NCBI RefSeq assembly: GCF_001194135.2
Contig: NC_068985.1
Coordinates: forward strand, 70,803,601-70,867,600
Direction of reading: 5' to 3'
Length of the DNA stretch: 64,000 bases
Source of the DNA: Octopus bimaculoides
Lineage: Eukaryota
Position numbers and translations under genes: made by a program
Shown here: in pieces, positions 4,504 through 53,105 of the stretch
How the letters are laid out: each line of letters begins with the position of its first letter
Numbering within the stretch: position 1 is the first letter of the stretch
Notes under the pieces: model-generated
Databases searched by the model: none
Seen by the model: the letters and a program-made list of their open reading frames with translations, nothing else
What the model was told of the DNA's origin: nothing

Positions 4504-5129
4504 NNNNNNNNNNNNNNNNNNNNNNNNNNNNNNNNNNNNNNNNNNNNNNNNNNNNNNNNNNNNNNNNNNNNNNNNNNNNNNNNNNNNNNNNNNNNNNNNN
4601 NNNNNNNNNNNNNNNNNNNNNNNNNNNNNNNNNNNNNNNNNNNNNNNNNNNNNNNNNNNNNNNNNNNNNNNNNNNNNNNNNNNNNNNNNNNNNNNNNNNN
4701 NNNNNNNNNNNNNNNNNNNNNNNNNNNNNNNNNNNNNNNNNNNNNNNNNNNNNNNNNNNNNNNNNNNNNNNNNNNNNNNNNNNNNNNNNNNNNNNNNNNN
4801 NNNNNNNNNNNNNNNNNNNNNNNNNNNNNNNNNNNNNNNNNNNNNNNNNNNNNNNNNNNNNNNNNNNNNNNNNNNNNNNNNNNNNNNNNNNNNNNNNNNN
4901 NNNNNNNNNNNNNNNNNNNNNNNNNNNNNNNNNNNNNNNNNNNNNNNNNNNNNNNNNNNNNNNNNNNNNNNNNNNNNNNNNNNNNNNNNNNNNNNNNNNN
5001 NNNNNNNNNNNNNNNNNNNNNNNNNNNNNNNNNNNNNNNNNNNNNNNNNNNNNNNNNNNNNNNNNNNNNNNNNNNNNNNNNNNNNNNNNNNNNNNNNNNN
5101 NNNNNNNNNNNNNNNNNNNNNNNNNNNNN

Positions 5130-13079: not shown

Positions 13080-13412
13080 AGATGCATAAATATATAGCCA
13101 TAGAAAGGGAGACAATGTATACAAACATATATACAGGCATAAACACACATATATATATATACACTAAGTCACATACACGCATACGCGCACCTACATACAC
13201 ATATATATTATATAAGTGTTTATATACACACACACATGATAAACAAGAAAAGAATGAGACAAGTAGTGCAGTTCATCGAAAAGATTTGATTTGTATTTTT
13301 CGGAAGAATCGACAGAAAAGTACTCGGTAATTTCATACTACTTTTTCTGTCGCTTTATGAATATATGTGTGTAGATATTACATACATACATATATACATA
13401 TATATATATACT

Positions 13413-13748
13413 CTTTTACTCTTTTACTTGTTTCAGTCATTTGACTGCGGCCATGCTGGAGCACCAGGAGGAGTGAAGGTTCGTGGCCCAGTGGTTAGTG
13501 AGTTGCACTCGTGGCTTCAATTCCCTCTCCGGGTGGCGCATTGTGTTCTTGAGCAAAACACTTCATTTCACATTGCTCTGCGATCATTGACGAATGACAG
13601 CCTCATGCACCTCAACAATGTCGATTTGACGGGGGGGCGGGGTCAGCTACTGGACAGCACATACATTTGATCACTATAAACAAATCACGCCTATACACAT
13701 AGAGGGGCGGCTGTGTCTAAACAGTTTGCTTCCTAACCACATGGTTGC
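13413..13748. mobile_element. Cluster of SINE fragments: family A 3' end (minus), a B-like head (plus) and a family A head (plus, cut by the gap)
   Basis: TTACTTGTTTCAGTCATTTTGACTGCGGCCATGCTGGAGCACC; GTGGCCCAGTGGTTAG...TTGTGTTCTTGAGCAAAACACT; GCTGTGTCTAAACAGTTTGCTTCCTAACCACATGGTT. Confidence 0.65.
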
Positions 13749-14140
13749 NNNNNNNNNNNNNNNNNNNNNNNNNNNNNNNNNNNNNNNNNNNNNNNNNNNN
13801 NNNNNNNNNNNNNNNNNNNNNNNNNNNNNNNNNNNNNNNNNNNNNNNNNNNNNNNNNNNNNNNNNNNNNNNNNNNNNNNNNNNNNNNNNNNNNNNNNNNN
13901 NNNNNNNNNNNNNNNNNNNNNNNNNNNNNNNNNNNNNNNNNNNNNNNNNNNNNNNNNNNNNNNNNNNNNNNNNNNNNNNNNNNNNNNNNNNNNNNNNNNN
14001 NNNNNNNNNNNNNNNNNNNNNNNNNNNNNNNNNNNNNNNNNNNNNNNNNNNNNNNNNNNNNNNNNNNNNNNNNNNNNNNNNNNNNNNNNNNNNNNNNNNN
14101 NNNNNNNNNNNNNNNNNNNNNNNNNNNNNNNNNNNNNNNN

Positions 14141-15044
14141 GAAAATTGTACATACCTCGATTATCTGCAGACTATAGTTTCAAAATCAATACTTCCAAAT
14201 TAAAGTATCTATTTATCATCAGTACAGATTGCCGATATTCCTATAATCGAACAGAATCTCGTGCTAGTTGTCTTCAACCAGTGAAAACGTGCATGTGATT
14301 CTATCCATTATAAAGATTAAAATTCAAAAGTCTTAGTTTTGGCGCGCTGAATCCGGAAAATATCTCTGCAGAAAATAATTTCTGCTTTGAATTTACCAAC
14401 TTTGAGAAATTAACATAATATGGTAAAAATTCGATATTAATTAATATCAATTTAATACCAGGAAAACTAGCACATTAAAAGAATATTAATTAATATCGAA
14501 TTTTTACCATAAAATGTTAATTAACCATAATCACATTTCTCAAAGTTGGTAAATTCAAAGCAGAAATTATTTTCTGCAGAGATATTTTCCGGATTCAGCG
14601 CGCCAAAACTAAGACTTTAGAATTTTAATCTTTATAATGGATAGAATCACGTGCACGTTTTCACTGGTTAAAGACAACTAGCACGAGATTCTGTTCGATT
14701 ATAGGAATATCGGCAATCTGTACTGATGATAAATAGATACTTTAATTTGGAAGTATTGATTTTGAAACTATAGTCTGCAGATAATCGAGGTATGTACAAT
14801 TTTCACTGGTCTAGCCTGCCTGTTTTTGCTCCGCTGAATCCGTATTTGAGAATTTTTTAAGTGAGCTTCCTCTAGCATATTGACAGACCGGTCACTGGTC
14901 AATCTTATATACACAAGTACTATAATCCTTTTAGGATCTCGAAAACAAATTTTTCCTGAACCTTCTGATTCTTTTAATGTGCTAGTTTTCCTGGTATTAA
15001 ATTGATATTAATTAATATCGAATTTTTACAATATTATGTTAATT
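14141..15044. repeat. Fold-back inverted duplication (arms 14141-14447 and 14483-14804) with a further inverted copy of the apex at 14968-15044
   Basis: The arms are near-perfect reverse complements (GAAAATTGTACATACCTCG... versus ...CGAGGTATGTACAATTTTC), with a 12-nt bulge at 14523-14534 and a 35-nt loop. Confidence 0.95.
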
Positions 15045-15189
15045 ATATATATATATATATAGGTATATATATATACATATGTGTGTGTGCGTGTGTGTAT
15101 ACACACACGTGTGTGTATGTGTGTGCAAATGCATGCGTGTGCCTGTGTATTTGCTTGTGCTTGTTCTACACCATTGCTTGACAACCACT

Positions 15190-15525
15190 TTTGCCTAAGA
15201 TACACTCAAATATTCACTGAAGTGCTTTGAGACCAACCCCAACAATTGGGAAATATTAACACAGGAGTGCCATGCCAGGCGAAATTGCGCCAACAGAAGA
15301 GTCACCTCCTACTAACAGAACAGGATTGCAGGAGCACAAAGATAATGTGAACTGCGCTAGTCCAGAGCCAATTCCTTGCCTTTAGTCCCAGCAGACCACC
15401 TTTGCGCCACCTGCTGCTTAGCCTCCGAAGCACACATTGGACTGATCGGCTACGGCCTGATACAGTGTGACCCTTCTTCTCCCATGTAATGCTTCTGGTC
15501 ATGGTCGACAACAATGGGTAAACAT
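15190..15525 (+). mobile_element. RTE-clade LINE 3' fragment
   Basis: Decayed translation .KDTLKYSLKCFETNPNNWE... and ...SEAHIGLIG. matches the RTE C-terminus (YKDTLK.SL....I....WE..A.DR; F.A.IGL.SH). Confidence 0.6.
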
Positions 15526-15807
15526 TACCATTATTAATTTCATTGACACTTTTGCTCTGGCACTATACGAAAAAGGTGAACCATATCAAATGACCAAAAG
15601 TCCTTTGGGTCATTCTTTCATCAACTTTTTAACACCCCTTTTACAATCCTTGCTGTTCCCAACAAGACTGTTTTCTGCTCAGCGCCTTTTCTGATGATAA
15701 TTCCTAGTTTCTCAAGCCATGCATCCAACTTTTTACTAACTGCCCCCAAGATATACGCCGTTCTTTCGTTCACAAACTTGCTTCTAAGATAACACTCCAT
15801 TACAGCT

Positions 15808-16192
15808 TTACTCTTTTACTAGTTTCAGTCATTTGACTGTGATCATGCTGGAGCACCATCTTCAGTCGAATAAATTGACCCAGGATTTATTCTTTGTAAG
15901 CCTCGTACTTATTCTATCGGCCTCTTTTGCCGAACCGCTAATTTGCGGGGGACATAAACACACTAACATCGACTGTCAAGCGATGGAGGGGGTACAAACA
16001 CAGACATACAAACATATGCATACTTATATATACGACGGGCTTCTTTCAGTTTCCGTGTACAAAATCTACTCACAAGCCTTTGATCAGCCAGAGGCTATAG
16101 CAGAAGATACTTGCCCAAGGTGCCTCGCAGTGGGCCTGAACCCGGAACCATGTGATTGGAAAGCAAGCTTCTTATCACACAGCCACGCCTGC
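15808..16192 (-). mobile_element. tRNA-derived SINE, family A (CORE-like), near full length
   Basis: On the minus strand: head GGCTGTGTGATAAG, B-box GGTTCAGGCCC, CORE-like GCACCTTGGGCAAGT, an internal (GT/TA) tract and a 3' tail ending GACTGAAACTAGTAAAAGAGTAA. Confidence 0.8.
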
Positions 16193-22787: not shown

Positions 22788-23114
<327 letters not shown>

Positions 23115-23119
23115 ATAAT

Positions 23120-23177
<58 letters not shown>

Positions 23178-36600: not shown

Positions 36601-38120
36601 TCCCTTCACGTCTGGCTGTACAGCCTTTTTGTTTGTTTATTTCACCGTTTCGTTTTCCTGTCTTGTTTTCTGTCCGCCACTACCCTCCACGAAAACAATT
36701 TAATTTGTGTTTGTGGGAAGAACCATTTTAACGATGCGTACTGCCTTAATTTCTTCGAAACGCCTGAGTTTTAATGGTGGCAGCTGATGAAGGGGATGTT
36801 TCTATGTGGCCTGCTTGTTTGTTGCACCTTGTTTACCATTTTGTCCTTGTTCTTTTGCCACGTCATGTACCCAGTTATGTATCTATATGTACATGTAGAT
36901 GAACGTATATACATACATGTACATATATATGCATATACTCATATATTGTTTGTATCACGACAGAACGCACGCGTTACCTTTATACAGTANNNNNNNNNNN
37001 NNNNNNNNNNNNNNNNNNNNNNNNNNNNNNNNNNNNNNNNNNNNNNNNNNNNNNNNNNNNNNNNNNNNNNNNNNNNNNNNNNNNNNNNNNNNNNNNNNNN
37101 NNNNNNNNNNNNNNNNNNNNNNNNNNNNNNNNNNNNNNNNNNNNNNNNNNNNNNNNNNNNNNNNNNNNNNNNNNNNNNNNNNNNNNNNNNNNNNNNNNNN
37201 NNNNNNNNNNNNNNNNNNNNNNNNNNNNNNNNNNNNNNNNNNNNNNNNNNNNNNNNNNNNNNNNNNNNNNNNNNNNNNNNNNNNNNNNNNNNNNNNNNNN
37301 NNNNNNNNNNNNNNNNNNNNNNNNNNNNNNNNNNNNNNNNNNNNNNNNNNNNNNNNNNNNNNNNNNNNNNNNNNNNNNNNNNNNNNNNNNNNNNNNNNNN
37401 NNNNNNNNNNNNNNNNNNNNNNNNNNNNNNNNNNNNNNNNNNNNNNNNNNNNNNNNNNNNNNNNNNNNNNNNNNNNNNNNNNNNNNNNNNNNNNNNNNNN
37501 NNNNNNNNNNNNNNNNNNNNNNNNNNNNNNNNNNNNNNNNNNNNNNNNNNNNNNNNNNNNNNNNNNNNNNNNNNNNNNNNNNNNNNNNNNNNNNNNNNNN
37601 NNNNNNNNNNNNNNNNNNNNNNNNNNNNNNNNNNNNNNNNNNNNNNNNNNNNNNNNNNNNNNNNNNNNNNNNNNNNNNNNNNNNNNNNNNNNNNNNNNNN
37701 NNNNNNNNNNNNNNNNNNNNNNNNNNNNNNNNNNNNNNNNNNNNNNNNNNNNNNNNNNNNNNNNNTCCCTTCACGTCTGGCTGTACAGCCTTTTTGTTTG
37801 TTTATTTCACCGTTTCGTTTTCCTGTCTTGTTTTCTGTCCGCCACTACCCTCCACGAAAACAATTTAATTTGTGTTTGTGGGAAGAACCATTTTAACGAT
37901 GCGTTCTGCCCTACTCTTCGAAACGCCTGTGTTAGAATGGGGGTAGCTGATGAAGGAAAATGTTCTCTATGTGGCCTATGTGTGTTCTGTACTCTGGTTA
38001 TTTTTTTTTTGTCTACGTTTTGTTTGTAATGTCCTCTACCCAGATATGTGCCTATATATACAGGTAGACGTAGGTATGCATATATCTGGATGTGTATATG
38101 CATATACTCATTTATTATTT

Positions 38121-38125
<5 letters not shown>
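36601..38125 (+). repeat. Direct duplication across a gap (36601-36989 and 37766-38125), probably a PLE pseudo-LTR-derived repeat
   Basis: The first 139 bp are identical (36601-36739 = 37766-37904); the rest is only roughly 75% similar. Confidence 0.85.
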
Positions 38126-38239: not shown

Positions 38240-38462
38240 TGTATATATGTGTGTATGTGTGTGTTTGTCCCACCACCACCATTGTTTCCCAGCAATGTTA
38301 GTGCGTTTGTGTTTCTGTAATTTAGCTGTTCAGCAGAAGAGACTGATAGAATAAGCACCAGGCTTACAGGCAATAAGTCCAGAGGTCAATTTCTTCAACT
38401 AAAAGGTGGTGCTCTAGTATGGCCACCGTCAAATGACTGAAACAAGTAAAAGAAAAAAAGAA
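38240..38462 (+). mobile_element. SINE family A 3' half
   Basis: GTGTTTGTCCC...GATAGAATAAGCACCAGGCTTAC...GGTGGTGCTCTAGTATGGCCACCGTCAAATGACTGAAACAAGTAAAAG. Confidence 0.75.
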
Positions 38463-38634
38463 TACCAGAAAAACCTTCCGTACCACTAAACCAAGGTCCT
38501 TTGAATATGTATGATGTATTTTATGGTTAAATATTAATTCTGTTTACGTTTGTGTAACTGAGATATTTTGGTTGGATTATATAGTCATTGGTGCTACTTT
38601 ACTTTTTATATTCTGTAACTGTCACAATATACTT

Positions 38635-39341: not shown

Positions 39342-39403
<62 letters not shown>

Positions 39404-39404
<1 letters not shown>

Positions 39405-39737
39405 TAGTAGTTTTATTTTTATAACGTGCTTTCCCTTCACTACCGAGCGCAGTGCTGTGTGCCTTGGGTATGTGCTGTGGTTTGCTGTGATGCTCTTATG
39501 GTTACTGTATTGAAAGTGTTTTGCGTAGGATGTGTGCAGTGCCCAGTAGTGCAATTTTCTGTATGTTATATATATTTGTAAGTCCCTGTGTTTTTGTTAT
39601 GTATTTGTCTGAATATTTTTTTATTATACCTAAGGCACCTACTATAATAGGAATTGTTTCTGCTTTTAGATTCCACATTCGAGTTACCTCTATTTCCAGG
39701 TCTTTGTATTTTGAAAGTTTTTCTATTTCTATTTCCT
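39404..39737 (-). mobile_element. R4/Dong-like RLE LINE 3' end inside (ATT)n
   Basis: Minus strand: EIEKLSKYKDLEIEVTRMWNLKAETIPIIVGALGIIKKYSDKYITKTQGLTNIYNIQKIALLGTAHILRKTLSIQ*; (ATT)n at 39343-39403 and 39738-39852. Confidence 0.9.
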
Positions 39738-43881: not shown

Positions 43882-44056
43882 NTCTTGTGAAGGCTTGGTA
43901 GTAGGTAGCAGGTAGCAGTCCCAAAAAATATTTGATGTGAGCTCTTCGTTTTGATTGTTTAAGTGGCAGTAGCCGAGGAAGGATCCGAAGAAGAAGAAGA
44001 AGAAGAAGAAGAAGAAGAAGAAGAAGAAGAAGAAGAAGAAGAAGAAGAAGAAGAAG

Positions 44057-44111
<55 letters not shown>

Positions 44112-46110
44112 TCAACACGGGAATGGTAGGACAATAGTAGGATCTTGGTGGAATCCTCTTATATGGTCAAGTGACCTAAAATGACCTGTTGTGTTTGTAA
44201 TAGTAGTGAATGAAATTGTTCTTAATAAATTCATGAGTATTAACTGTTCTGAATCTATCATTTTTAATATTTGCGTGGGTATCATTCTAAGGACCTTGTA
44301 GTAGTTTCATTTGTGGTGGAACGCATTCAAAAGGGGTTTATATTTTGTAATAAAATATGACTCTTTGCTAATGCGCTGATTATAGGTTGCATCGTCCCTG
44401 AATTTATAGAAGGGGAAAAATTCTGAAGCTGGGTTTTTCGTTTGTGGCGCAAATGTCCATTTGTCCGCTGAATGCAATTTTTCTGTATTCTCAAATTTTG
44501 ATCTGGGATCTATGTAGAGCCATCCTTTGATGTAGACTGTTTTTAGTTTGGCCTATGTATTGCTCTCGACACCCAGAGCAAGTTAATACATATATTAGGT
44601 TTTCCGAAGTACGTGTTAAGTTGTTTTTCGCTGTAAAACGTTCACCCCGTTTAAAAGAGAACTCCGATCCCTCAATTAGGTTGACGCATATACTACAGTT
44701 AGGTCTTCCGCATCGTTTTACTGACGGCTTCAGTGTTGTTGTCGAATGTACTTGGGCTTGTGTTAGGAGACTTTTCATAGATTTGAGTTGTCTTTTACTC
44801 TTTATAATGGTAGGCGTTTGGAGGATTAAATTCATTTTGTGATCCATTTTATGTAGGAGAATGTTCTGGAGGATGGTGTCGATGGCTTCATTGTTAGGGA
44901 GTTTGTGTGTGGCGATGTATGGTAGGCTTTTGGTTGTAAATCCTTCTTTCGTTTGGGATGTCTGAGTCCGTGGATGTTGAGTTGTATGGCACGTTGAAAG
45001 CATATGTCAATTAGTGATAGTGGGTAATTCCTGGTAATGACTGCATGTTTTAGTTCCTGTAGTCGTGTGTCCCTAGTGTCTGTATTAGAAATTATAGTAC
45101 AAATCCTTTTTTGCTAGGTTGAAGGAGATATTCTTTCTAGTGTGTCTCGTGTGGCATGCGTTGAGCGGTAGATATTGCTTGGAGTCTGTGGGCTTATAGA
45201 TTATATCTGTTTCTATTTTGTTGTTGGATTTCTTAATGAGGATGTCGAGAAATGGAAGTTGTTGACAGGTGTATGCGACATTTGCGCCACTAACGAAAAA
45301 CCCAGCTTCAGAATTTTTCCCCTCTATAAATTCAGGGACGATGCAACCTATAATTTATGCATTAACAAAGAGTCATATTTTATCACAAAATATAAACCCT
45401 TTTTGAATGCGTCCACCACAAATGAAACTATTATAAGGGCTTTAGAATAATACCCACGCAAATATTAAAAATGATAGATTCAGAACGGTCACTACCTATG
45501 AATTTATTCAGAACAATTCCATTCACTACTATTACAACTACAACAGGTCACTTTTAGGTCACTTGACCATATAAGAGGATTCCACCAACATCCTGCTATT
45601 GTCCTACCATTCCTGTGTTGTTGTTGTTGTTGTTCTTGTTCTTCTTCTTCTTCTTCTTCTTCTTCTTCTTCTTCTTCTTCTTCTTCTTCTTCTTCTTCTT
45701 CTTCTTCTTCTTCTTCTTCTTCTTCTTCTTCTTCTTCTTCCTCGGCTACTGCTGCTTACACCATCAAAACAAAAAGCTCATATCAAATATACTTTTGGGT
45801 CTGCTACTACCTACTGCCTACTACCAAGCCTTCAGACAGACAGAAAATATTGCTTCCTCTATGGAGGCACACAAAGAAACCTGCCGGTAATGGGACCAAA
45901 ACATAACAAAACAAGATGGGCTCGAGACGAGACCGTTAGTGGATGGACGAATGACAAAACAATAAACAGAATAAAGGCTTAGGGCCACAAGAATACAACA
46001 AATAATAATGATAATAGATATACAGCAAAAAGCCTTGGGACTACAAGACAAGACAAAAGTGGCAACGCGAAGGAGAAATGAAAACTGTCCTAAAGAACTA
46101 TGGACACGGG
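43882..46110 (-). mobile_element. Penelope-like element (Neptune-like Cys linker), 5'-truncated, with an inverted pseudo-LTR copy on the plus strand (45277-~46110)
   Basis: Minus strand: LPFLDILIKK..TDIIYKPTDSKQYL..CH.RHT.KNI.FNLAK (RT thumb), then CGRPNCSIC...NLIYVLTCSGCREQYIGQTKNSLHQRMALHRS (GIY-YIG). Inverted arms are 43887-44457 and 45277-45834. Confidence 0.9.
44491..45003 (-). pseudogene. GIY-YIG endonuclease portion of the Penelope ORF (frameshifted on both sides)
   Basis: ORF track 170 aa containing LIYVLTCSGC..QYIGQT..L.QRM..H. Confidence 0.85.
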
Positions 46111-48765: not shown

Positions 48766-48817
48766 CATTTACGCACGTTTCAATCTGGCCAATGGTTTGG
48801 CAGATCTCTTCAGAATG
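48766..48817 (-). ncRNA. Minimal type I hammerhead ribozyme in the pseudo-LTR
   Basis: Minus strand: CATT CTGAAGA GATCTG cc aaaccatt ggc CAGATT GAAA CGTGCG TA AATG. Stem I is CAUU/AAUG, the core is CUGAAGA/GAAA, stem II is GAUCUG/CAGAUU, stem III is ACG-UG-CGU, and the cleavage triplet is GUA. Confidence 0.8.
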
Positions 48818-49216
48818 TTGAGGAGTATGTTAAGAGTTCATGGTGTGAGAGATGTAGGAGAAGTGATTAGTGGATATATTAATGTATATGGTGGTATAAT
48901 AATAGCGATAGGTAAAGAAAGCCTTACGTTTTAGTTGAAGTTGTGTTGATCTTCCTGTAAAGGGATGTAGGATGGGTGGTATTTAAGCTCATCATTCCGA
49001 TTTTAATCAAATGCATCTCCACGTGATTTTATGATTGAGGGATGCGTCGTATATTTATAGCACCGGCGGTGTTAGTACAGGGAAGCAACCCTAAATTTAG
49101 GTGAAAAGGGGGCTAACTCTGGTCTTATTCGTATCTAATTATAATTAATTATACTTAGAAGGAAAATTATTTTATGCATATTTAGTTTTACTTAGGAAGT
49201 GTAATGTATTATATAT

Positions 49217-50881
49217 TTAATTATACTTAGAGAATGAGTATTTAGTAGCGTGAAGACAGATTAGGGTAGATTCATATCTCCTGTTTAATAGGTCATTCTT
49301 AGCCGTTAGGATCTCGAGGCGTTCACTTAAACAGAGGTGACAGCGTTAGGAATTAGCTACTTTTAGTATGTGCCACTTTAGTTTATATTCTATCTTATTG
49401 TCGTTTAGTTCCCAGATATACCTACTAAGCCCTGTTGAATTTGCTTATTTCTGTTTTTAAAACTGGATAGGTGCTCATTATATCTGAGGCGTATTTGGTT
49501 TTTCGTCGCACTTATGTAAGATCCAGTGTGGGTGTTTGTTTGTACGTCACATTGGTAAACTATATTATCAGTCTTGCATCTATTGGAGAAATTACATTTA
49601 TTCCTATCTCTACAGCCACATAGGTTGTAAGGGGTGTCTATGTCTGTGTGTTGTTGTGTGGCCCTATTGTTTTTTTTGGTGTGCGTCCTTCCTAGTAAGG
49701 GGTGTTGGATTAGGGTTGGAGTTAGTTCTATTATTTGGTGGATTGTTGATTTGGTTGTTCGTGGTGTTTCTAGCTGTATAGAATGCGTCTAATTTCTTAT
49801 TATCAATAGATGCTATTATGGTAGCTAAGTTACATGTCAGGCTGTGGCCTATTCTTATTTTGTTCTTAAATATTTCTGCGTATTTATTGTTTACATTGAG
49901 GTGTTTATCTATTATGTTCATTAGTGAGCGGACTATGTTAGATTTGAGGTTCATGTTATAGGGAATGATCAGCCAGATCGTATCCTTATTGTTCTTGTTG
50001 CTATTACGGCCATATCTAGTATAGAACCTGCCATCGTAACTGGGAAGGCTGGTGAATTTTTCTTTACGGCTATCTAATTTGTTTCTATAGTTACGTTTAT
50101 TTTTTATGTGTCTTTTCATTTTTTCCTTGTTAGTATTGTTAGGTATTTGTGGGCTCGATATATGGTTTCTTTTAGTCTGCTGGGTCTCCCTGTAATTTAT
50201 GCTAAACTTATCGTTGTATTGCTTAATATTGGTTTTGTTCAGGTGGCTATTGCATTTCTGCTTCGTCTTGTTATTAGCCTTAATCGTCCTATTAATATTG
50301 TTGGTATTGGTGTTTACACTGTTGTTGGTATTTTTGGTGTTATGTGGTTTGGCTTTGGGACATTTTGTATTTTTATTACATGTGTTATGTTTATCTGTGT
50401 CATTCATATCGTTAGTGTGGTTTCCAGCGGTGTTTGGTGTGTTAATAGTGTGTGATTTTCTAGCGTTTGGATTCCGTATAGTTGGGTCTTTTTTATGGGT
50501 ATTGGATTCTATGAATTTAATTTTATGGTTAAATCCTGCCCTGTGTAGTGCGATGTTGTAGGTTTCCTTATGCTGATTAAAAATAACTTGGTTAGAGGAG
50601 AGGCGTGATATCCTATTGCTTATACTATGTGCTAAGCCTCTCTTGAGGAATAGTGGGTGGTTGCTGGATGCGTTTATGTATTTTAGGTTAGTATTAGGCT
50701 TTATGTATGGTTCATGTAGTCCTGTGGCTAGGTTGCAATTGGCGTCTAAATAGTTTATGGATGTGTGTTCGTTTTCTATAGAAATGGCTAGTCCAAATCT
50801 TTTGAAGAGTTTATGTAAGTTTTTCTTAATGAGTTCTAGTTTCCTATTCGAGGGATTTTTAATTATTTCTTCTAAGTGTAA
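49217..50881 (-). pseudogene. PLE ORF remnant: RT C-terminus/thumb, Asn/Thr/Lys-rich linker, GIY-YIG
   Basis: ~405 open codons (50881-49664, checked codon by codon upstream of the tracked ATG). A one-base loss in an A8 run (~49670) and further small indels break the endonuclease; stop near 49217. Confidence 0.85.
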
Positions 50882-51212
50882 TTAATTATAATTAGATACG
50901 AATAACACCAGAGTTGGTCCCCTTTTCACCTAAATTTAGGGTTGCTTCCCTGTACTAACACCGCCGGTGCTATAAATATACGACGCATCCCTCAATCATA
51001 AAATCACGTGGAGATGCATTTGATTAAAATCGGAATAATGAGCTTAAATAGCACCCATCCTACATCCCCTTACAGGAAGACCAACACAACTTCAACTAAA
51101 ACGTAAGGCTTTCTTTACCTATCGCTATTATTATACCACCATATACATTAATATATCCACTAATCACTTCTCCTACATCTCTCACACCATGAACTCTTAA
51201 CATACTCCTCAA

Positions 51213-51263
51213 CATTCTGAAGAGATCTGCCAAACCATTGGCCAGATTGAAACGTGCGTAAAT
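51213..51263 (+). ncRNA. Second copy of the hammerhead ribozyme (right arm; last stem I base falls in the gap)
   Basis: Identical sequence CATTCTGAAGAGATCTGCCAAACCATTGGCCAGATTGAAACGTGCGTAAAT. Confidence 0.75.
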
Positions 51264-51615
51264 NNNNNNNNNNNNNNNNNNNNNNNNNNNNNNNNNNNNN
51301 NNNNNNNNNNNNNNNNNNNNNNNNNNNNNNNNNNNNNNNNNNNNNNNNNNNNNNNNNNNNNNNNNNNNNNNNNNNNNNNNNNNNNNNNNNNNNNNNNNNN
51401 NNNNNNNNNNNNNNNNNNNNNNNNNNNNNNNNNNNNNNNNNNNNNNNNNNNNNNNNNNNNNNNNNNNNNNNNNNNNNNNNNNNNNNNNNNNNNNNNNNNN
51501 NNNNNNNNNNNNNNNNNNNNNNNNNNNNNNNNNNNNNNNNNNNNNNNNNNNNNNNNNNNNNNNNNNNNNNNNNNNNNNNATACACATATATATATATATA
51601 TATACGTATATATAC

Positions 51616-52879: not shown

Positions 52880-53105
52880 ATATGTGAGTGTGTCTATGTT
52901 TGTCCTCCCACCATCGCTTGGCAACAGATGTTGGTATGTTTATGCCTCCGTAACCTCGCAGTTCGGCAAGATAGATTGATGGAATAAGAAATAGACTTAT
53001 AAAGAATAAGTTCTGGGGGCGATTTCTTCGACTAAAACCCATTAAGTCGGTGCTCCAGCTTGGCCGCAGTCAAATGGCTAGAACAAGTAAAAGAATAAAA
53101 GAAAA
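52880..53105 (+). mobile_element. SINE family A 3' half
   Basis: GTTTGTCCTCCCACCATCGCTTGGCAAC...GGTGCTCCAGCTTGGCCGCAGTCAAATG..GAACAAGTAAAAGAATAAAAG. Confidence 0.8.

What the first reader, a model, noticed from the sequence alone, without database searches (positions are those of the whole stretch)
14141..15044. Fold-back of a circularly permuted ~520-bp unit, switching strand at a perfect 16-bp palindrome
Seen: 14141-14447 pairs almost perfectly with 14483-14804 (12-nt bulge, 35-nt loop). The 77-bp apex X (14408-14484) reappears inverted at 14968-15044 with one mismatch. Read on the minus strand, 15044->14483 runs X-B-A-X(partial), so the unit is terminally redundant or head-to-tail. The strand switch (~14483) begins inside the palindrome GATATTAATTAATATC, which also occurs at 14433-14448 and 15004-15019. 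The left arm runs straight into the gap, so the hairpin may be longer. Inference: this looks like template switching at a palindrome during rolling-circle or rolling-hairpin copying of a non-coding element (Helentron/Helitron-like, or viral-terminus-like). The alternative is a MITE with 77-bp TIRs that suffered an inversion. No feature above explains it.
Basis: partly seen in the sequence, partly recalled or inferred. Interest (0 to 1): 0.7.

Follow-up and report, generated by a model that had tools for sequence, protein, structure and literature searches.

The report
Inverted and tandem non-coding repeat cluster
Beside an assembly gap in a draft animal genome, about 2.8 copies of a 0.5-kb non-coding repeat lie head-to-head and head-to-tail, and their junctions look like ordinary fold-back (snap-back) repair or replication scars rather than a new kind of element.

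Summary
14141-14804 is a 664-nt near-perfect hairpin (DNA fold -362 kcal/mol, z = -37). The 77-nt segment X recurs inverted at 14968-15044 with one mismatch. Small corrections: the bulge is 15 nt, not 12, and the palindrome at the switch point is 14 nt perfect (15 of 16).

The layout is A'(14141-14407)-X'(14408-14484) | x(14483-14522)-15-nt filler-A(14538-14804)-B(14805-14967)-X(14968-15044)-(TA)n. This gives a 507-bp unit, A-B-X, with a discrete 3' end (GTTAATT) reached by all three X copies. The three X copies all differ, and the A arms differ by 3 substitutions, so this is not one sequence assembled twice.

Both odd junctions fit fold-back priming. The main junction has a 2-nt overlap backed by a 6-bp stem. 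The 15-nt filler reads as a short inverted copy of the X end.

Rolling-circle origin is not shown. The unit has a 5' TC and a palindrome near its 3' end, but no CTRR end and no subterminal inverted repeats. No protein-family match turned up in the 17 larger frames scanned. No other copy could be found in the window or in any reachable collection.

An assembly artefact is not excluded, because the left arm starts at a contig edge. Low interest.

The parts
13749..14140 (.). Assembly gap (392 N) directly abutting the left arm. It may hide the mirrored B' and X' segments.
   Evidence: (gap list). Unlike several other gaps in the window (4504, 5745, 8493, 55209), this one is not flanked by (TA)n.
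14141..14407 (-). A', the inverted copy of segment A (267 nt), truncated by the contig edge.
   Evidence: Reverse complement of 14538-14804 with 3 substitutions (14326, 14294, 14275). Exact runs are 81, 31, 18 and 134 nt.
14408..14484 (-). X_L, a full inverted copy of the 77-nt segment X, joined directly to A' with no filler.
   Evidence: 76/77 identical to the reverse complement of 14968-15044. It contains the palindrome GATATTAATTAATATC at 14433-14448.
14483..14484 (.). Head-to-head junction with a 2-nt 'AT' overlap shared by the end of the inverted copy and the start of the forward copy.
   Evidence: Homology limits. The snap-back pairs 14483-84 with 14446-47 and 14474-79 with 14451-56, leaving a 17-nt loop (third fold).
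14483..14522 (+). x_Ri, the forward partial copy of X (positions 38-77). It starts at the second base of the palindrome.
   Evidence: 2/40 mismatches to X_L and 3/40 to X_t. The 14-nt perfect palindrome is at 14483-14496.
14523..14537 (.). 15-nt filler AACCATAATCACATT between X and A in the forward copy only. Read together with the preceding AATT, it is a short inverted copy of the X end.
   Evidence: Indel in the alignment. AATTAACCATAAT against the reverse complement of ATTATGTTAATT gives 12 matches and a 1-nt indel (read). The 10-nt palindrome GTTAATTAAC is at 14516-14525.
14538..14804 (+). A, the forward copy (267 nt). It starts TCTCAAAG and holds an internal imperfect 72-nt palindrome at about 14632-14703.
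   Evidence: The internal palindrome scores z = 7.8; the fold of 14630-14705 is -13 kcal/mol, z = -4.7.
14805..14967 (+). B, 163 nt, present once in the assembled sequence and unrelated to A or X.
   Evidence: Local alignments of B against A, X and their reverse complements score no better than shuffles.
14968..15044 (+). X_t, the forward full copy of X that ends the cluster. Its palindrome lies at 15004-15019, 25 nt from the end, and (TA)n follows.

Best explanation
This is a small cluster of at least 2.8 copies of a roughly 507-bp, AT-rich, non-coding repeat unit (A-B-X). Its family cannot be assigned.

Shown:
- The unit has a discrete 3' end (...ATGTTAATT).
- Copies abut head-to-tail (X|A).
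- One copy is inverted against the next, producing a 664-nt or longer hairpin-capable palindrome.

Inferred:
- The head-to-head junction arose by fold-back (snap-back) priming or microhomology-mediated template switching, during break repair or replication. A 3' end at 14484 folded back on the quasi-palindromic X sequence, pairing 2 terminal nt plus a 6-bp stem across a 17-nt loop, and was extended along its own strand.
- The 15-nt filler at the X end is a second, very short templated inverted insertion of the same kind.
- The arms have since diverged by about 1-1.5%.
- The element has no evident function. Its practical effects are a local palindrome that short reads cannot span, hence the gap, and a potential hairpin RNA or DNA.
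For: - Geometry and statistics of the repeats.
- The three X copies are pairwise different and the A arms differ by 3 substitutions plus a 15-nt indel, so these are distinct copies.
- All three X copies lose homology at the same base, after GTTAATT. The only indel between the arms also sits there, within 3 nt. An indel placed at random along the ~330 aligned nt would fall that close only about 2% of the time (my own rough estimate from the coordinates).
- The junction sequence 14485 onward is exactly the reverse complement of 14445 downward, with AT overlap and the adjacent 6-bp stem.
- The filler is an inverted copy of the X end.
- Published work shows that fold-back priming at breaks near short inverted repeats produces inverted duplications (PMC10622511, PMC3907307), and produces very short (5-34 bp) templated inverted insertions using microhomology (PMC11724301).
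- The inverted duplication does not extend into the unique right flank: 13200-13748 has no match to 15110-15810. The event is therefore local and confined to the repeat.
Against: - No second locus could be examined, so the claim that this is a 'repeat unit' rests on this cluster alone.
- The left arm begins at a contig edge in a gap-rich short-read-style scaffold, so part of the structure could be a mis-join.
- Two nucleotides of terminal pairing is weak priming. Simple end-joining of two breaks would leave the same sequence.
- A discrete terminus with head-to-tail copies is also what a rolling-circle concatemer, or adjacent transposon insertions, would give.
Confidence: 0.45

Rival explanations
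1. Rolling-circle concatemer. The unit is a non-autonomous Helitron/Helentron-like element, the X|A joins are circle or tandem junctions from failed termination, and the strand switch happened at the 3' palindrome during rolling-circle copying.
For: - The unit begins TC(TCAAAG) at both X|A junctions.
- A 16-nt perfect palindrome lies 25 nt from the 3' end. That is within the 8-35 bp reported for HINEs (PMC4067079) and near the Helitron pattern.
- The unit ends share no TIR.
- Whole copies abut head-to-tail with 0 or 15 nt between them. Tandem whole-element arrays are reported for Helitrons (PMC7492417, introduction).
- All ends can be drawn flanked by T.
- Helitrons make up about 1% of an octopus genome (PMC13282606, supplement). 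This matters only if the window is octopod, which is untested.
Against: - The 3' end is GTTAATT, not CTRR.
- There are no 12-15-bp subterminal inverted repeats (A against the reverse complement of X, z = -0.4).
- The unit holds no central tandem repeat or microsatellite.
- The 17 larger frames scanned gave no Pfam match other than one weak GIY-YIG hit, so no Rep or helicase domain was seen.
- The T flanks are trivial in 65% A+T DNA, and the boundaries are ambiguous by 3 nt.
- The switch lies at the base of the palindrome, 37 nt from the other breakpoint, and not at a known Rep cleavage position.
Confidence: 0.12
2. Assembly artefact. The inversion, or the whole left arm, is a mis-join, a hairpin mis-traversal or a mis-oriented small contig at a repeat. 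The real locus would be a plain tandem or a single copy.
For: - The left arm starts at the first base after a 392-N gap.
- The window has 18 gaps.
- The outermost 134 nt of the left arm are an exact inverse of 14671-14804 and carry no private variant.
- Palindromes are known trouble spots for assemblers (general knowledge).
- Two other inverted repeats in the window also end at gaps: 43888-44460 and 50860-51263.
Against: - The arms are not identical: 3 substitutions, a 15-nt indel and 2 differences in X.
- X occurs in three different versions, more than two haplotypes of one copy can supply.
- The junction word ...AAAAGAATATTAATTAATATCG... belongs to neither orientation of a plain tandem, so it must have come from reads (inference).
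- No other short-loop fold-back occurs at any of the other 35 contig ends in the window.
Confidence: 0.2
3. A transposon pair. Two or three copies of a TIR-type MITE, for example a TTAA-targeting one, inserted next to or into each other in opposite orientation, with later small deletions.
For: - The forward copy 14525-15038 is flanked by TTAA on both sides (14521-14524 and 15039-15042).
- Its ends share a short inverted motif, (C)CATAAT ... ATTATG; with the flanks this reads AATTAAC(C)ATAAT / ATTATGTTAATT.
- The region is AT-rich, about 0.5 kb and non-coding, which is typical of MITEs.
Against: - The TTAA and AATT motifs are parts of a palindrome that belongs to X itself, so the apparent 'TSD' is not independent evidence.
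- The inverted copy lacks the 5' motif altogether.
- Homology among the three X ends runs 2 nt past TTAA.
- The order A'-X' cannot come from a single inverted copy of A-B-X. It needs a head-to-tail pair anyway.
- The inverted terminal motif is only 6-12 nt long.
Confidence: 0.13
4. An ordinary satellite-like tandem array with an internal inversion. Most of the array would be collapsed or hidden in the gap.
For: - The 522-nt direct periodicity.
- Satellites are about 3% of an octopus genome (PMC13282606, supplement), if the organism guess is right.
- The gap is adjacent.
Against: - Only about 1.1 forward and at least 0.7 inverted units are assembled.
- The array ends exactly at the same base where the inter-unit indel sits, which argues for a unit with real termini rather than an arbitrary monomer phase.
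- The estimated gap of 392 nt is less than one unit.
Confidence: 0.1

Closest known systems
Fold-back (snap-back) inverted duplications and short templated inverted insertions at DNA breaks (yeast and human; PMC10622511, PMC11724301, PMC3907307)
   Same: - Two inverted arms are separated by a short single-copy spacer.
- There is junction microhomology (2 nt plus a nearby 6-bp stem).
- The junction lies next to a natural short inverted repeat.
- A second 9-13-nt inverted insertion lies close by.
   Different: - Here the arms are only 0.3 kb or more and lie inside a repeat cluster, not at chromosome scale.
- The event is old (about 1-1.5% arm divergence) and germline-fixed, if it is real.
- The mechanism is inferred from one sequence, not observed.
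Helentron-associated interspersed elements (HINE / DINE-1; PMC4067079, PMC7492417) and Helitron tandem arrays
   Same: - Non-coding and AT-rich.
- A short palindrome lies within 8-35 bp of the 3' end.
- T-rich flanks.
- Whole units joined head-to-tail.
- Such elements are known in molluscs.
   Different: - No 12-15-bp subterminal inverted repeats.
- No central tandem repeats or microsatellite inside the unit.
- No CTRR end.
- No autonomous partner was seen.
- A head-to-head junction is not a described feature of these elements.
MITEs and Foldback-type elements with long inverted arms
   Same: A long near-perfect inverted repeat with a short loop, non-coding and about 0.5-1 kb.
   Different: - The arms are copies of a unit that also occurs head-to-tail.
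- The right arm continues into B-X, which is not mirrored in the assembled sequence.
- No unambiguous target-site duplication.

Membership tests
Canonical Helitron | 5' terminus TC | tested here: inconclusive
   Both X|A junctions are followed by TCTCAAAG. However, the boundary is ambiguous by 3 nt (ATT repeat) and is defined from only two junctions.
Canonical Helitron | 3' terminus CTRR | tested here: not met
   All three X copies end ...ATGTTAATT.
Canonical Helitron | 16-20-nt palindrome about 11 bp from the 3' end | tested here: inconclusive
   A 16-nt perfect palindrome at 15004-15019 lies 25 nt from the end at 15044. The length is right, but the distance is larger than the canonical one (criterion from PMC4067079).
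Canonical Helitron | Insertion between A and T without a target-site duplication | not testable with these tools
   Only one outer end is visible (AATT|ATATAT). The left end is in the gap, and no empty site or other copy is available.
Canonical Helitron / Helentron | An autonomous Rep/helicase partner sharing the termini | not testable with these tools
In the window, 17 of the larger open frames gave no Pfam match except a weak GIY-YIG hit.
Helentron non-autonomous element (HINE/DINE-1) | 12-15-bp subterminal inverted repeats, 2-4 nt from the 5' end and 38-60 nt from the 3' end | tested here: not met
   The best local alignment of A against the reverse complement of X scores 10, against a shuffle mean of 10.6 (z = -0.4). 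Criterion from PMC4067079.
Helentron non-autonomous element (HINE/DINE-1) | A short palindrome 8-35 bp from the 3' terminus | tested here: met
   GATATTAATTAATATC ends 25 nt before the 3' end in X_t and in X_L.
Helentron non-autonomous element (HINE/DINE-1) | T-rich / TT target, with ends flanked by T | tested here: inconclusive
   All ends can be drawn with a flanking T if the 3' end is set at GTTAAT. The DNA is 65% A+T, and the boundaries were chosen after the fact.
Helentron non-autonomous element (HINE/DINE-1) | Central tandem repeats or a microsatellite inside the element | tested here: not met
   TRF finds nothing inside 14485-14994. The (TA)n starts after the unit's end.
TIR transposon / MITE | Terminal inverted repeats at the two ends of one unit | tested here: inconclusive
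   - The 77-nt X'/X pair exists, but X' continues colinearly into A', so it belongs to an inverted copy.
- The unit's own ends share only (C)CATAAT/ATTATG, 12-13 nt with the flanks, and only in the forward copy.
TIR transposon / MITE | Target-site duplication | tested here: inconclusive
   TTAA lies on both sides of 14525-15038, but it is part of the palindrome GTTAATTAAC and of X itself.
Satellite DNA | A long head-to-tail array of monomers | tested here: not met
   The assembled sequence holds 1.08 forward units and at least 0.68 inverted units. The gap is estimated at 392 nt, less than one unit. The real array length is unknown.
Fold-back inverted duplication (mechanistic class) | Inverted arms, a short single-copy spacer and junction microhomology next to a short inverted repeat | tested here: met
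   - Arms are 316 and 331 nt.
- The spacer is 17 nt by pairing or 35 nt by homology.
- There is an AT overlap and a 6-bp stem.
- The quasi-palindrome AAATT-GATATTAATTAATATC-GAATTT is intrinsic to X.
Rolling-hairpin viral terminus (parvovirus-like) | Terminal hairpins flanking viral genes, or similarity to viral sequence | tested here: not met
   There is no coding capacity. Three exact-word scans of viral contigs gave 0 matches. The element sits between SINE-like and microsatellite host DNA.

The most novel reading that the evidence does not exclude
The unit is a non-autonomous rolling-circle (Helitron/Helentron-like) element of a cephalopod, preserved as a head-to-tail concatemer whose replication switched strands at its own 3' palindrome. 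That would be a natural record of hairpin-mediated template switching during eukaryotic rolling-circle transposition.
Probability: 0.07. Interest if true: 0.55.

Novelty: new member of a known kind. Interest (0 to 1): 0.2.

Why it matters
The practical value is for the assembly. The gap at 13749-14140 is probably caused by this palindrome, and the locus should be treated as unresolved until long reads span it.

Biologically it is a tidy example of short palindromes inside repeats seeding fold-back rearrangements, with two nested strand switches within 40 nt of each other. That phenomenon is already known.

It would become interesting only if the same junction recurs at many loci, or if a Rep/helicase partner shares the termini. 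It would then bear on how rolling-circle elements make tandem and inverted arrays, and satellite DNA, in molluscs.

Tried and rejected
1. Other copies in the window. blastn with word sizes 11 and 9 found none, not even diverged ones.
2. Copies elsewhere. Exact-word scans returned 0 hits in metagenome contigs, viral contigs and GTDB genome contigs.
3. A trick to reach eukaryotic read assemblies through proteins. I joined the seven longest stop-free frames of the element into one composite query; none of the 1074 word-sharing candidates scored. A transposon ORF from the window (44491-45003, minus strand) found a single 56%-identical metagenome protein. The source genome is therefore not in that collection, and sampling it for copies is impossible.
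4. Rfam and tRNA scans of the window gave nothing.
5. Pfam on 17 of the larger frames gave only a weak GIY-YIG hit far from the locus.
6. I searched the literature for the SINE-like flank to fix the organism: 0 papers. 'Octopod cephalopod' therefore remains a recollection, not a result.
7. Is B a degenerate copy of A? No.
8. Does the mirror extend into the unique flank? No.
9. Is the palindrome an unusually stable hairpin? Only modestly. The two X copies fold at -4.8 and -7.9 kcal/mol, z = -1.6 and -4.1.

Full report
**Context.** The window is a draft eukaryotic scaffold. It has 18 runs of N, 35% G+C and abundant TA/TG/CA microsatellites. SINE-like segments are repeated through the window, for example 13409-13466, 15807-15858, 38407-38464 and 53049-53102. 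From memory these flanks resemble the abundant SINE of octopuses. I could not verify that (one search found no paper), so the organism is a lead only. Rfam and tRNA scans are empty.

- The repeat finder and blastn give an inverted repeat 14141-14410 / 14535-14804 (270 nt, 99%).
- X 14408-14484 / 14968-15044 is 77 nt at 99%.
- A direct repeat 14474-14523 / 14996-15045 is spaced 522 nt apart.
- As single-stranded DNA the region folds into one long hairpin of -361.8 kcal/mol. Shuffles average -76, so z = -37.
- Three details need correcting. The indel between the arms is 15 nt, not 12. The palindrome copy at the switch point is 15/16, with a 14-nt perfect core at 14483-14496. The unit is 507 bp, or 522 bp with the filler.

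**Anatomy.** Reading the + strand:
- gap
- A' 14141-14407
- X_L' 14408-14484
- a 2-nt AT overlap at 14483-84
- x_Ri 14483-14522, which is X positions 38-77
- 15-nt filler 14523-14537
- A 14538-14804 (267 nt)
- B 14805-14967 (163 nt)
- X_t 14968-15044
- (TA)n(TG)n

X is followed by A twice, once directly in the inverted copy and once after the filler. B is followed by X once.

**Are these distinct copies?**
- The A arms differ at three positions, with exact runs of 81, 31, 18 and 134 nt.
- The three X copies are pairwise different: X_L against X_t 1/77, x_Ri against X_L 2/40, x_Ri against X_t 3/40.
- Three versions cannot come from one sequence assembled twice, or from two haplotypes of one copy.

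**A discrete terminus.** All three X copies stop being alike after the same base (...ATGTTAATT). They are then followed by TCTCAAAG, by the filler, and by (TA)n respectively. The only indel between the arms lies at that same point, within the 3-nt ATT ambiguity. An indel placed at random along ~330 aligned nt would fall within 3 nt of that point only about 2% of the time (my own rough estimate). I read this as a real element end, which argues against an arbitrary satellite monomer phase.

**The junctions.** X is itself a quasi-palindrome, AAATT-GATATTAATTAATATC-GAATTT (z = 4.9).
- Main junction. The inverted copy runs to 14484, and the sequence from 14485 onward is exactly the reverse complement of 14445 downward.
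- The predicted local fold pairs 14483-84 with 14446-47. After a 3-nt mismatch it pairs 14474-79 with 14451-56, around a 17-nt loop.
- That is the geometry of a 3' end snapping back on its own strand and being extended.
- Second junction. At the other end of the 40-nt x_Ri piece, AATT plus the filler reads AATTAACCATAAT. This is the reverse complement of the X end ATTATGTTAATT with one extra C, and it creates the 10-nt palindrome GTTAATTAAC.
- There are thus two strand switches 40 nt apart.
- Published yeast and human work describes both products. One is inverted duplications primed by fold-back at breaks near short inverted repeats (PMC10622511, PMC3907307). The other is 5-34-bp templated inverted insertions using microhomology (PMC11724301).
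- This mechanistic reading is an inference. End-joining of two breaks would leave the same letters.

**Extent.** The mirror cannot extend into the unique right flank, because 13200-13748 has no similarity to 15110-15810. The palindrome therefore ends inside the 392-N gap. There is room in the gap for a mirrored B' (163 nt) and X' (77 nt). Unlike several other gaps in the window, this one is not flanked by (TA)n, which fits a gap caused by the inverted repeat itself.

**What kind of unit is it?** It is non-coding. The longest stop-free frame is 79 codons, and nothing in the 5.8-billion-protein collection resembles any of its frames. B is unrelated to A or X. A carries its own imperfect 72-nt palindrome.

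I tested it against the hallmarks in PMC4067079 and PMC7492417:
- In favour of a rolling-circle element: a 5' TC, a 16-nt palindrome 25 nt from the 3' end, no TIRs between the unit's ends, and whole units abutting head-to-tail.
- Against: no CTRR end, no 12-15-bp subterminal inverted repeats (z = -0.4), and no internal tandem repeat or microsatellite. None of the 17 larger frames of the window scanned matched a Rep or helicase family.
- A TTAA-flanked MITE reading is possible for the forward copy (TTAA at 14521-24 and 15039-42; ends (C)CATAAT/ATTATG). These motifs are parts of X's own palindrome, and the inverted copy lacks the 5' motif.

I therefore do not file the unit under any family.

For priors, and only if the organism guess holds: in Octopus vulgaris, Helitrons are about 1% of the genome, satellites about 3%, and unclassified repeats about 15% (PMC13282606 and its supplement).

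**Related sequences.** None could be obtained.
- There is no other copy in the 64 kb.
- Exact-word scans gave zero matches in metagenome, viral and prokaryote genome collections.
- A transposon ORF from the window has only one distant relative in the protein collection, so the source genome is not held there.

**Artefact?**
- Points for an artefact: the left arm starts at a contig edge, and its outer 134 nt carry no private variant.
- Points against: the arms and the three X copies differ; the junction word belongs to neither orientation of a simple tandem, so it must have come from reads; and no other contig end in the window shows a short-loop fold-back.
- I put the artefact reading at about 0.2.

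**Verdict.** The feature is real in the sequence. It is best read as a head-to-tail plus head-to-head cluster of an unclassified 0.5-kb non-coding repeat, with junctions that are fold-back or template-switch scars at its own AT-rich quasi-palindrome. The rolling-circle or viral framing is not supported by anything tested. This is a new instance of a known kind, and of low interest unless genome-wide copies show that the junction recurs.

Noticed in passing
window 43888-44460 and 45273-45834; ORF 44491-45003 (-): A 570-bp inverted repeat (88% identical) flanks a 170-aa ORF with a weak GIY-YIG match (E = 0.0023, below Pfam's cut-off). Its only relative is a 56%-identical metagenome protein annotated PF01541. 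It looks like a Penelope-like retroelement remnant. The left arm starts 5 nt after a gap.
   Followed up: partly
window 48767-49169 and 50860-51263; frame 49667-50881 (-): A 404-bp inverted repeat (97.5% identical) encloses a 405-codon stop-free, N/K-rich frame with no Pfam match. The right arm ends exactly at the gap at 51264. It may be a young long-TIR element of unknown family.
   Followed up: partly
window 13409-13466, 15807-15858, 38407-38464, 53049-53102 (and weaker copies): A SINE-like module (…TTTCAGTCATTTGACTG.GGCCATGCTGGAGCACC…) recurs next to TA/TG microsatellites. From memory it resembles the abundant octopus SINE. A literature search for the sequence found nothing.
   Followed up: partly
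window gaps at 4504, 5745, 8493, 55209 and probably others: Several of the 18 gaps are flanked on both sides by (TA)n runs, so many gaps here probably come from microsatellites. The gap at 13749-14140 is an exception.
   Followed up: no
window 36601-36953 and 37766-38122: A 355-bp direct repeat (84% identical) straddles the gap 36990-37765. It could be a tandem duplication or a terminal direct repeat of an element whose interior is unassembled.
   Followed up: no
window 22890-23175 and 39343-39627: A 286-bp inverted pair, 94.8% identical and 16 kb apart. These look like two copies of a young interspersed repeat.
   Followed up: no
window 14590-14608 and 14824-14842: Inside the unit, CGGATTCAGCGCGCCAAAA in A is inverted as TTTTGCTCCGCTGAATCCG in B (16/19 matches, 215 nt apart). 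It is not significant against shuffles (z = 2.0), so it may be chance or an eroded internal inverted repeat.
   Followed up: partly
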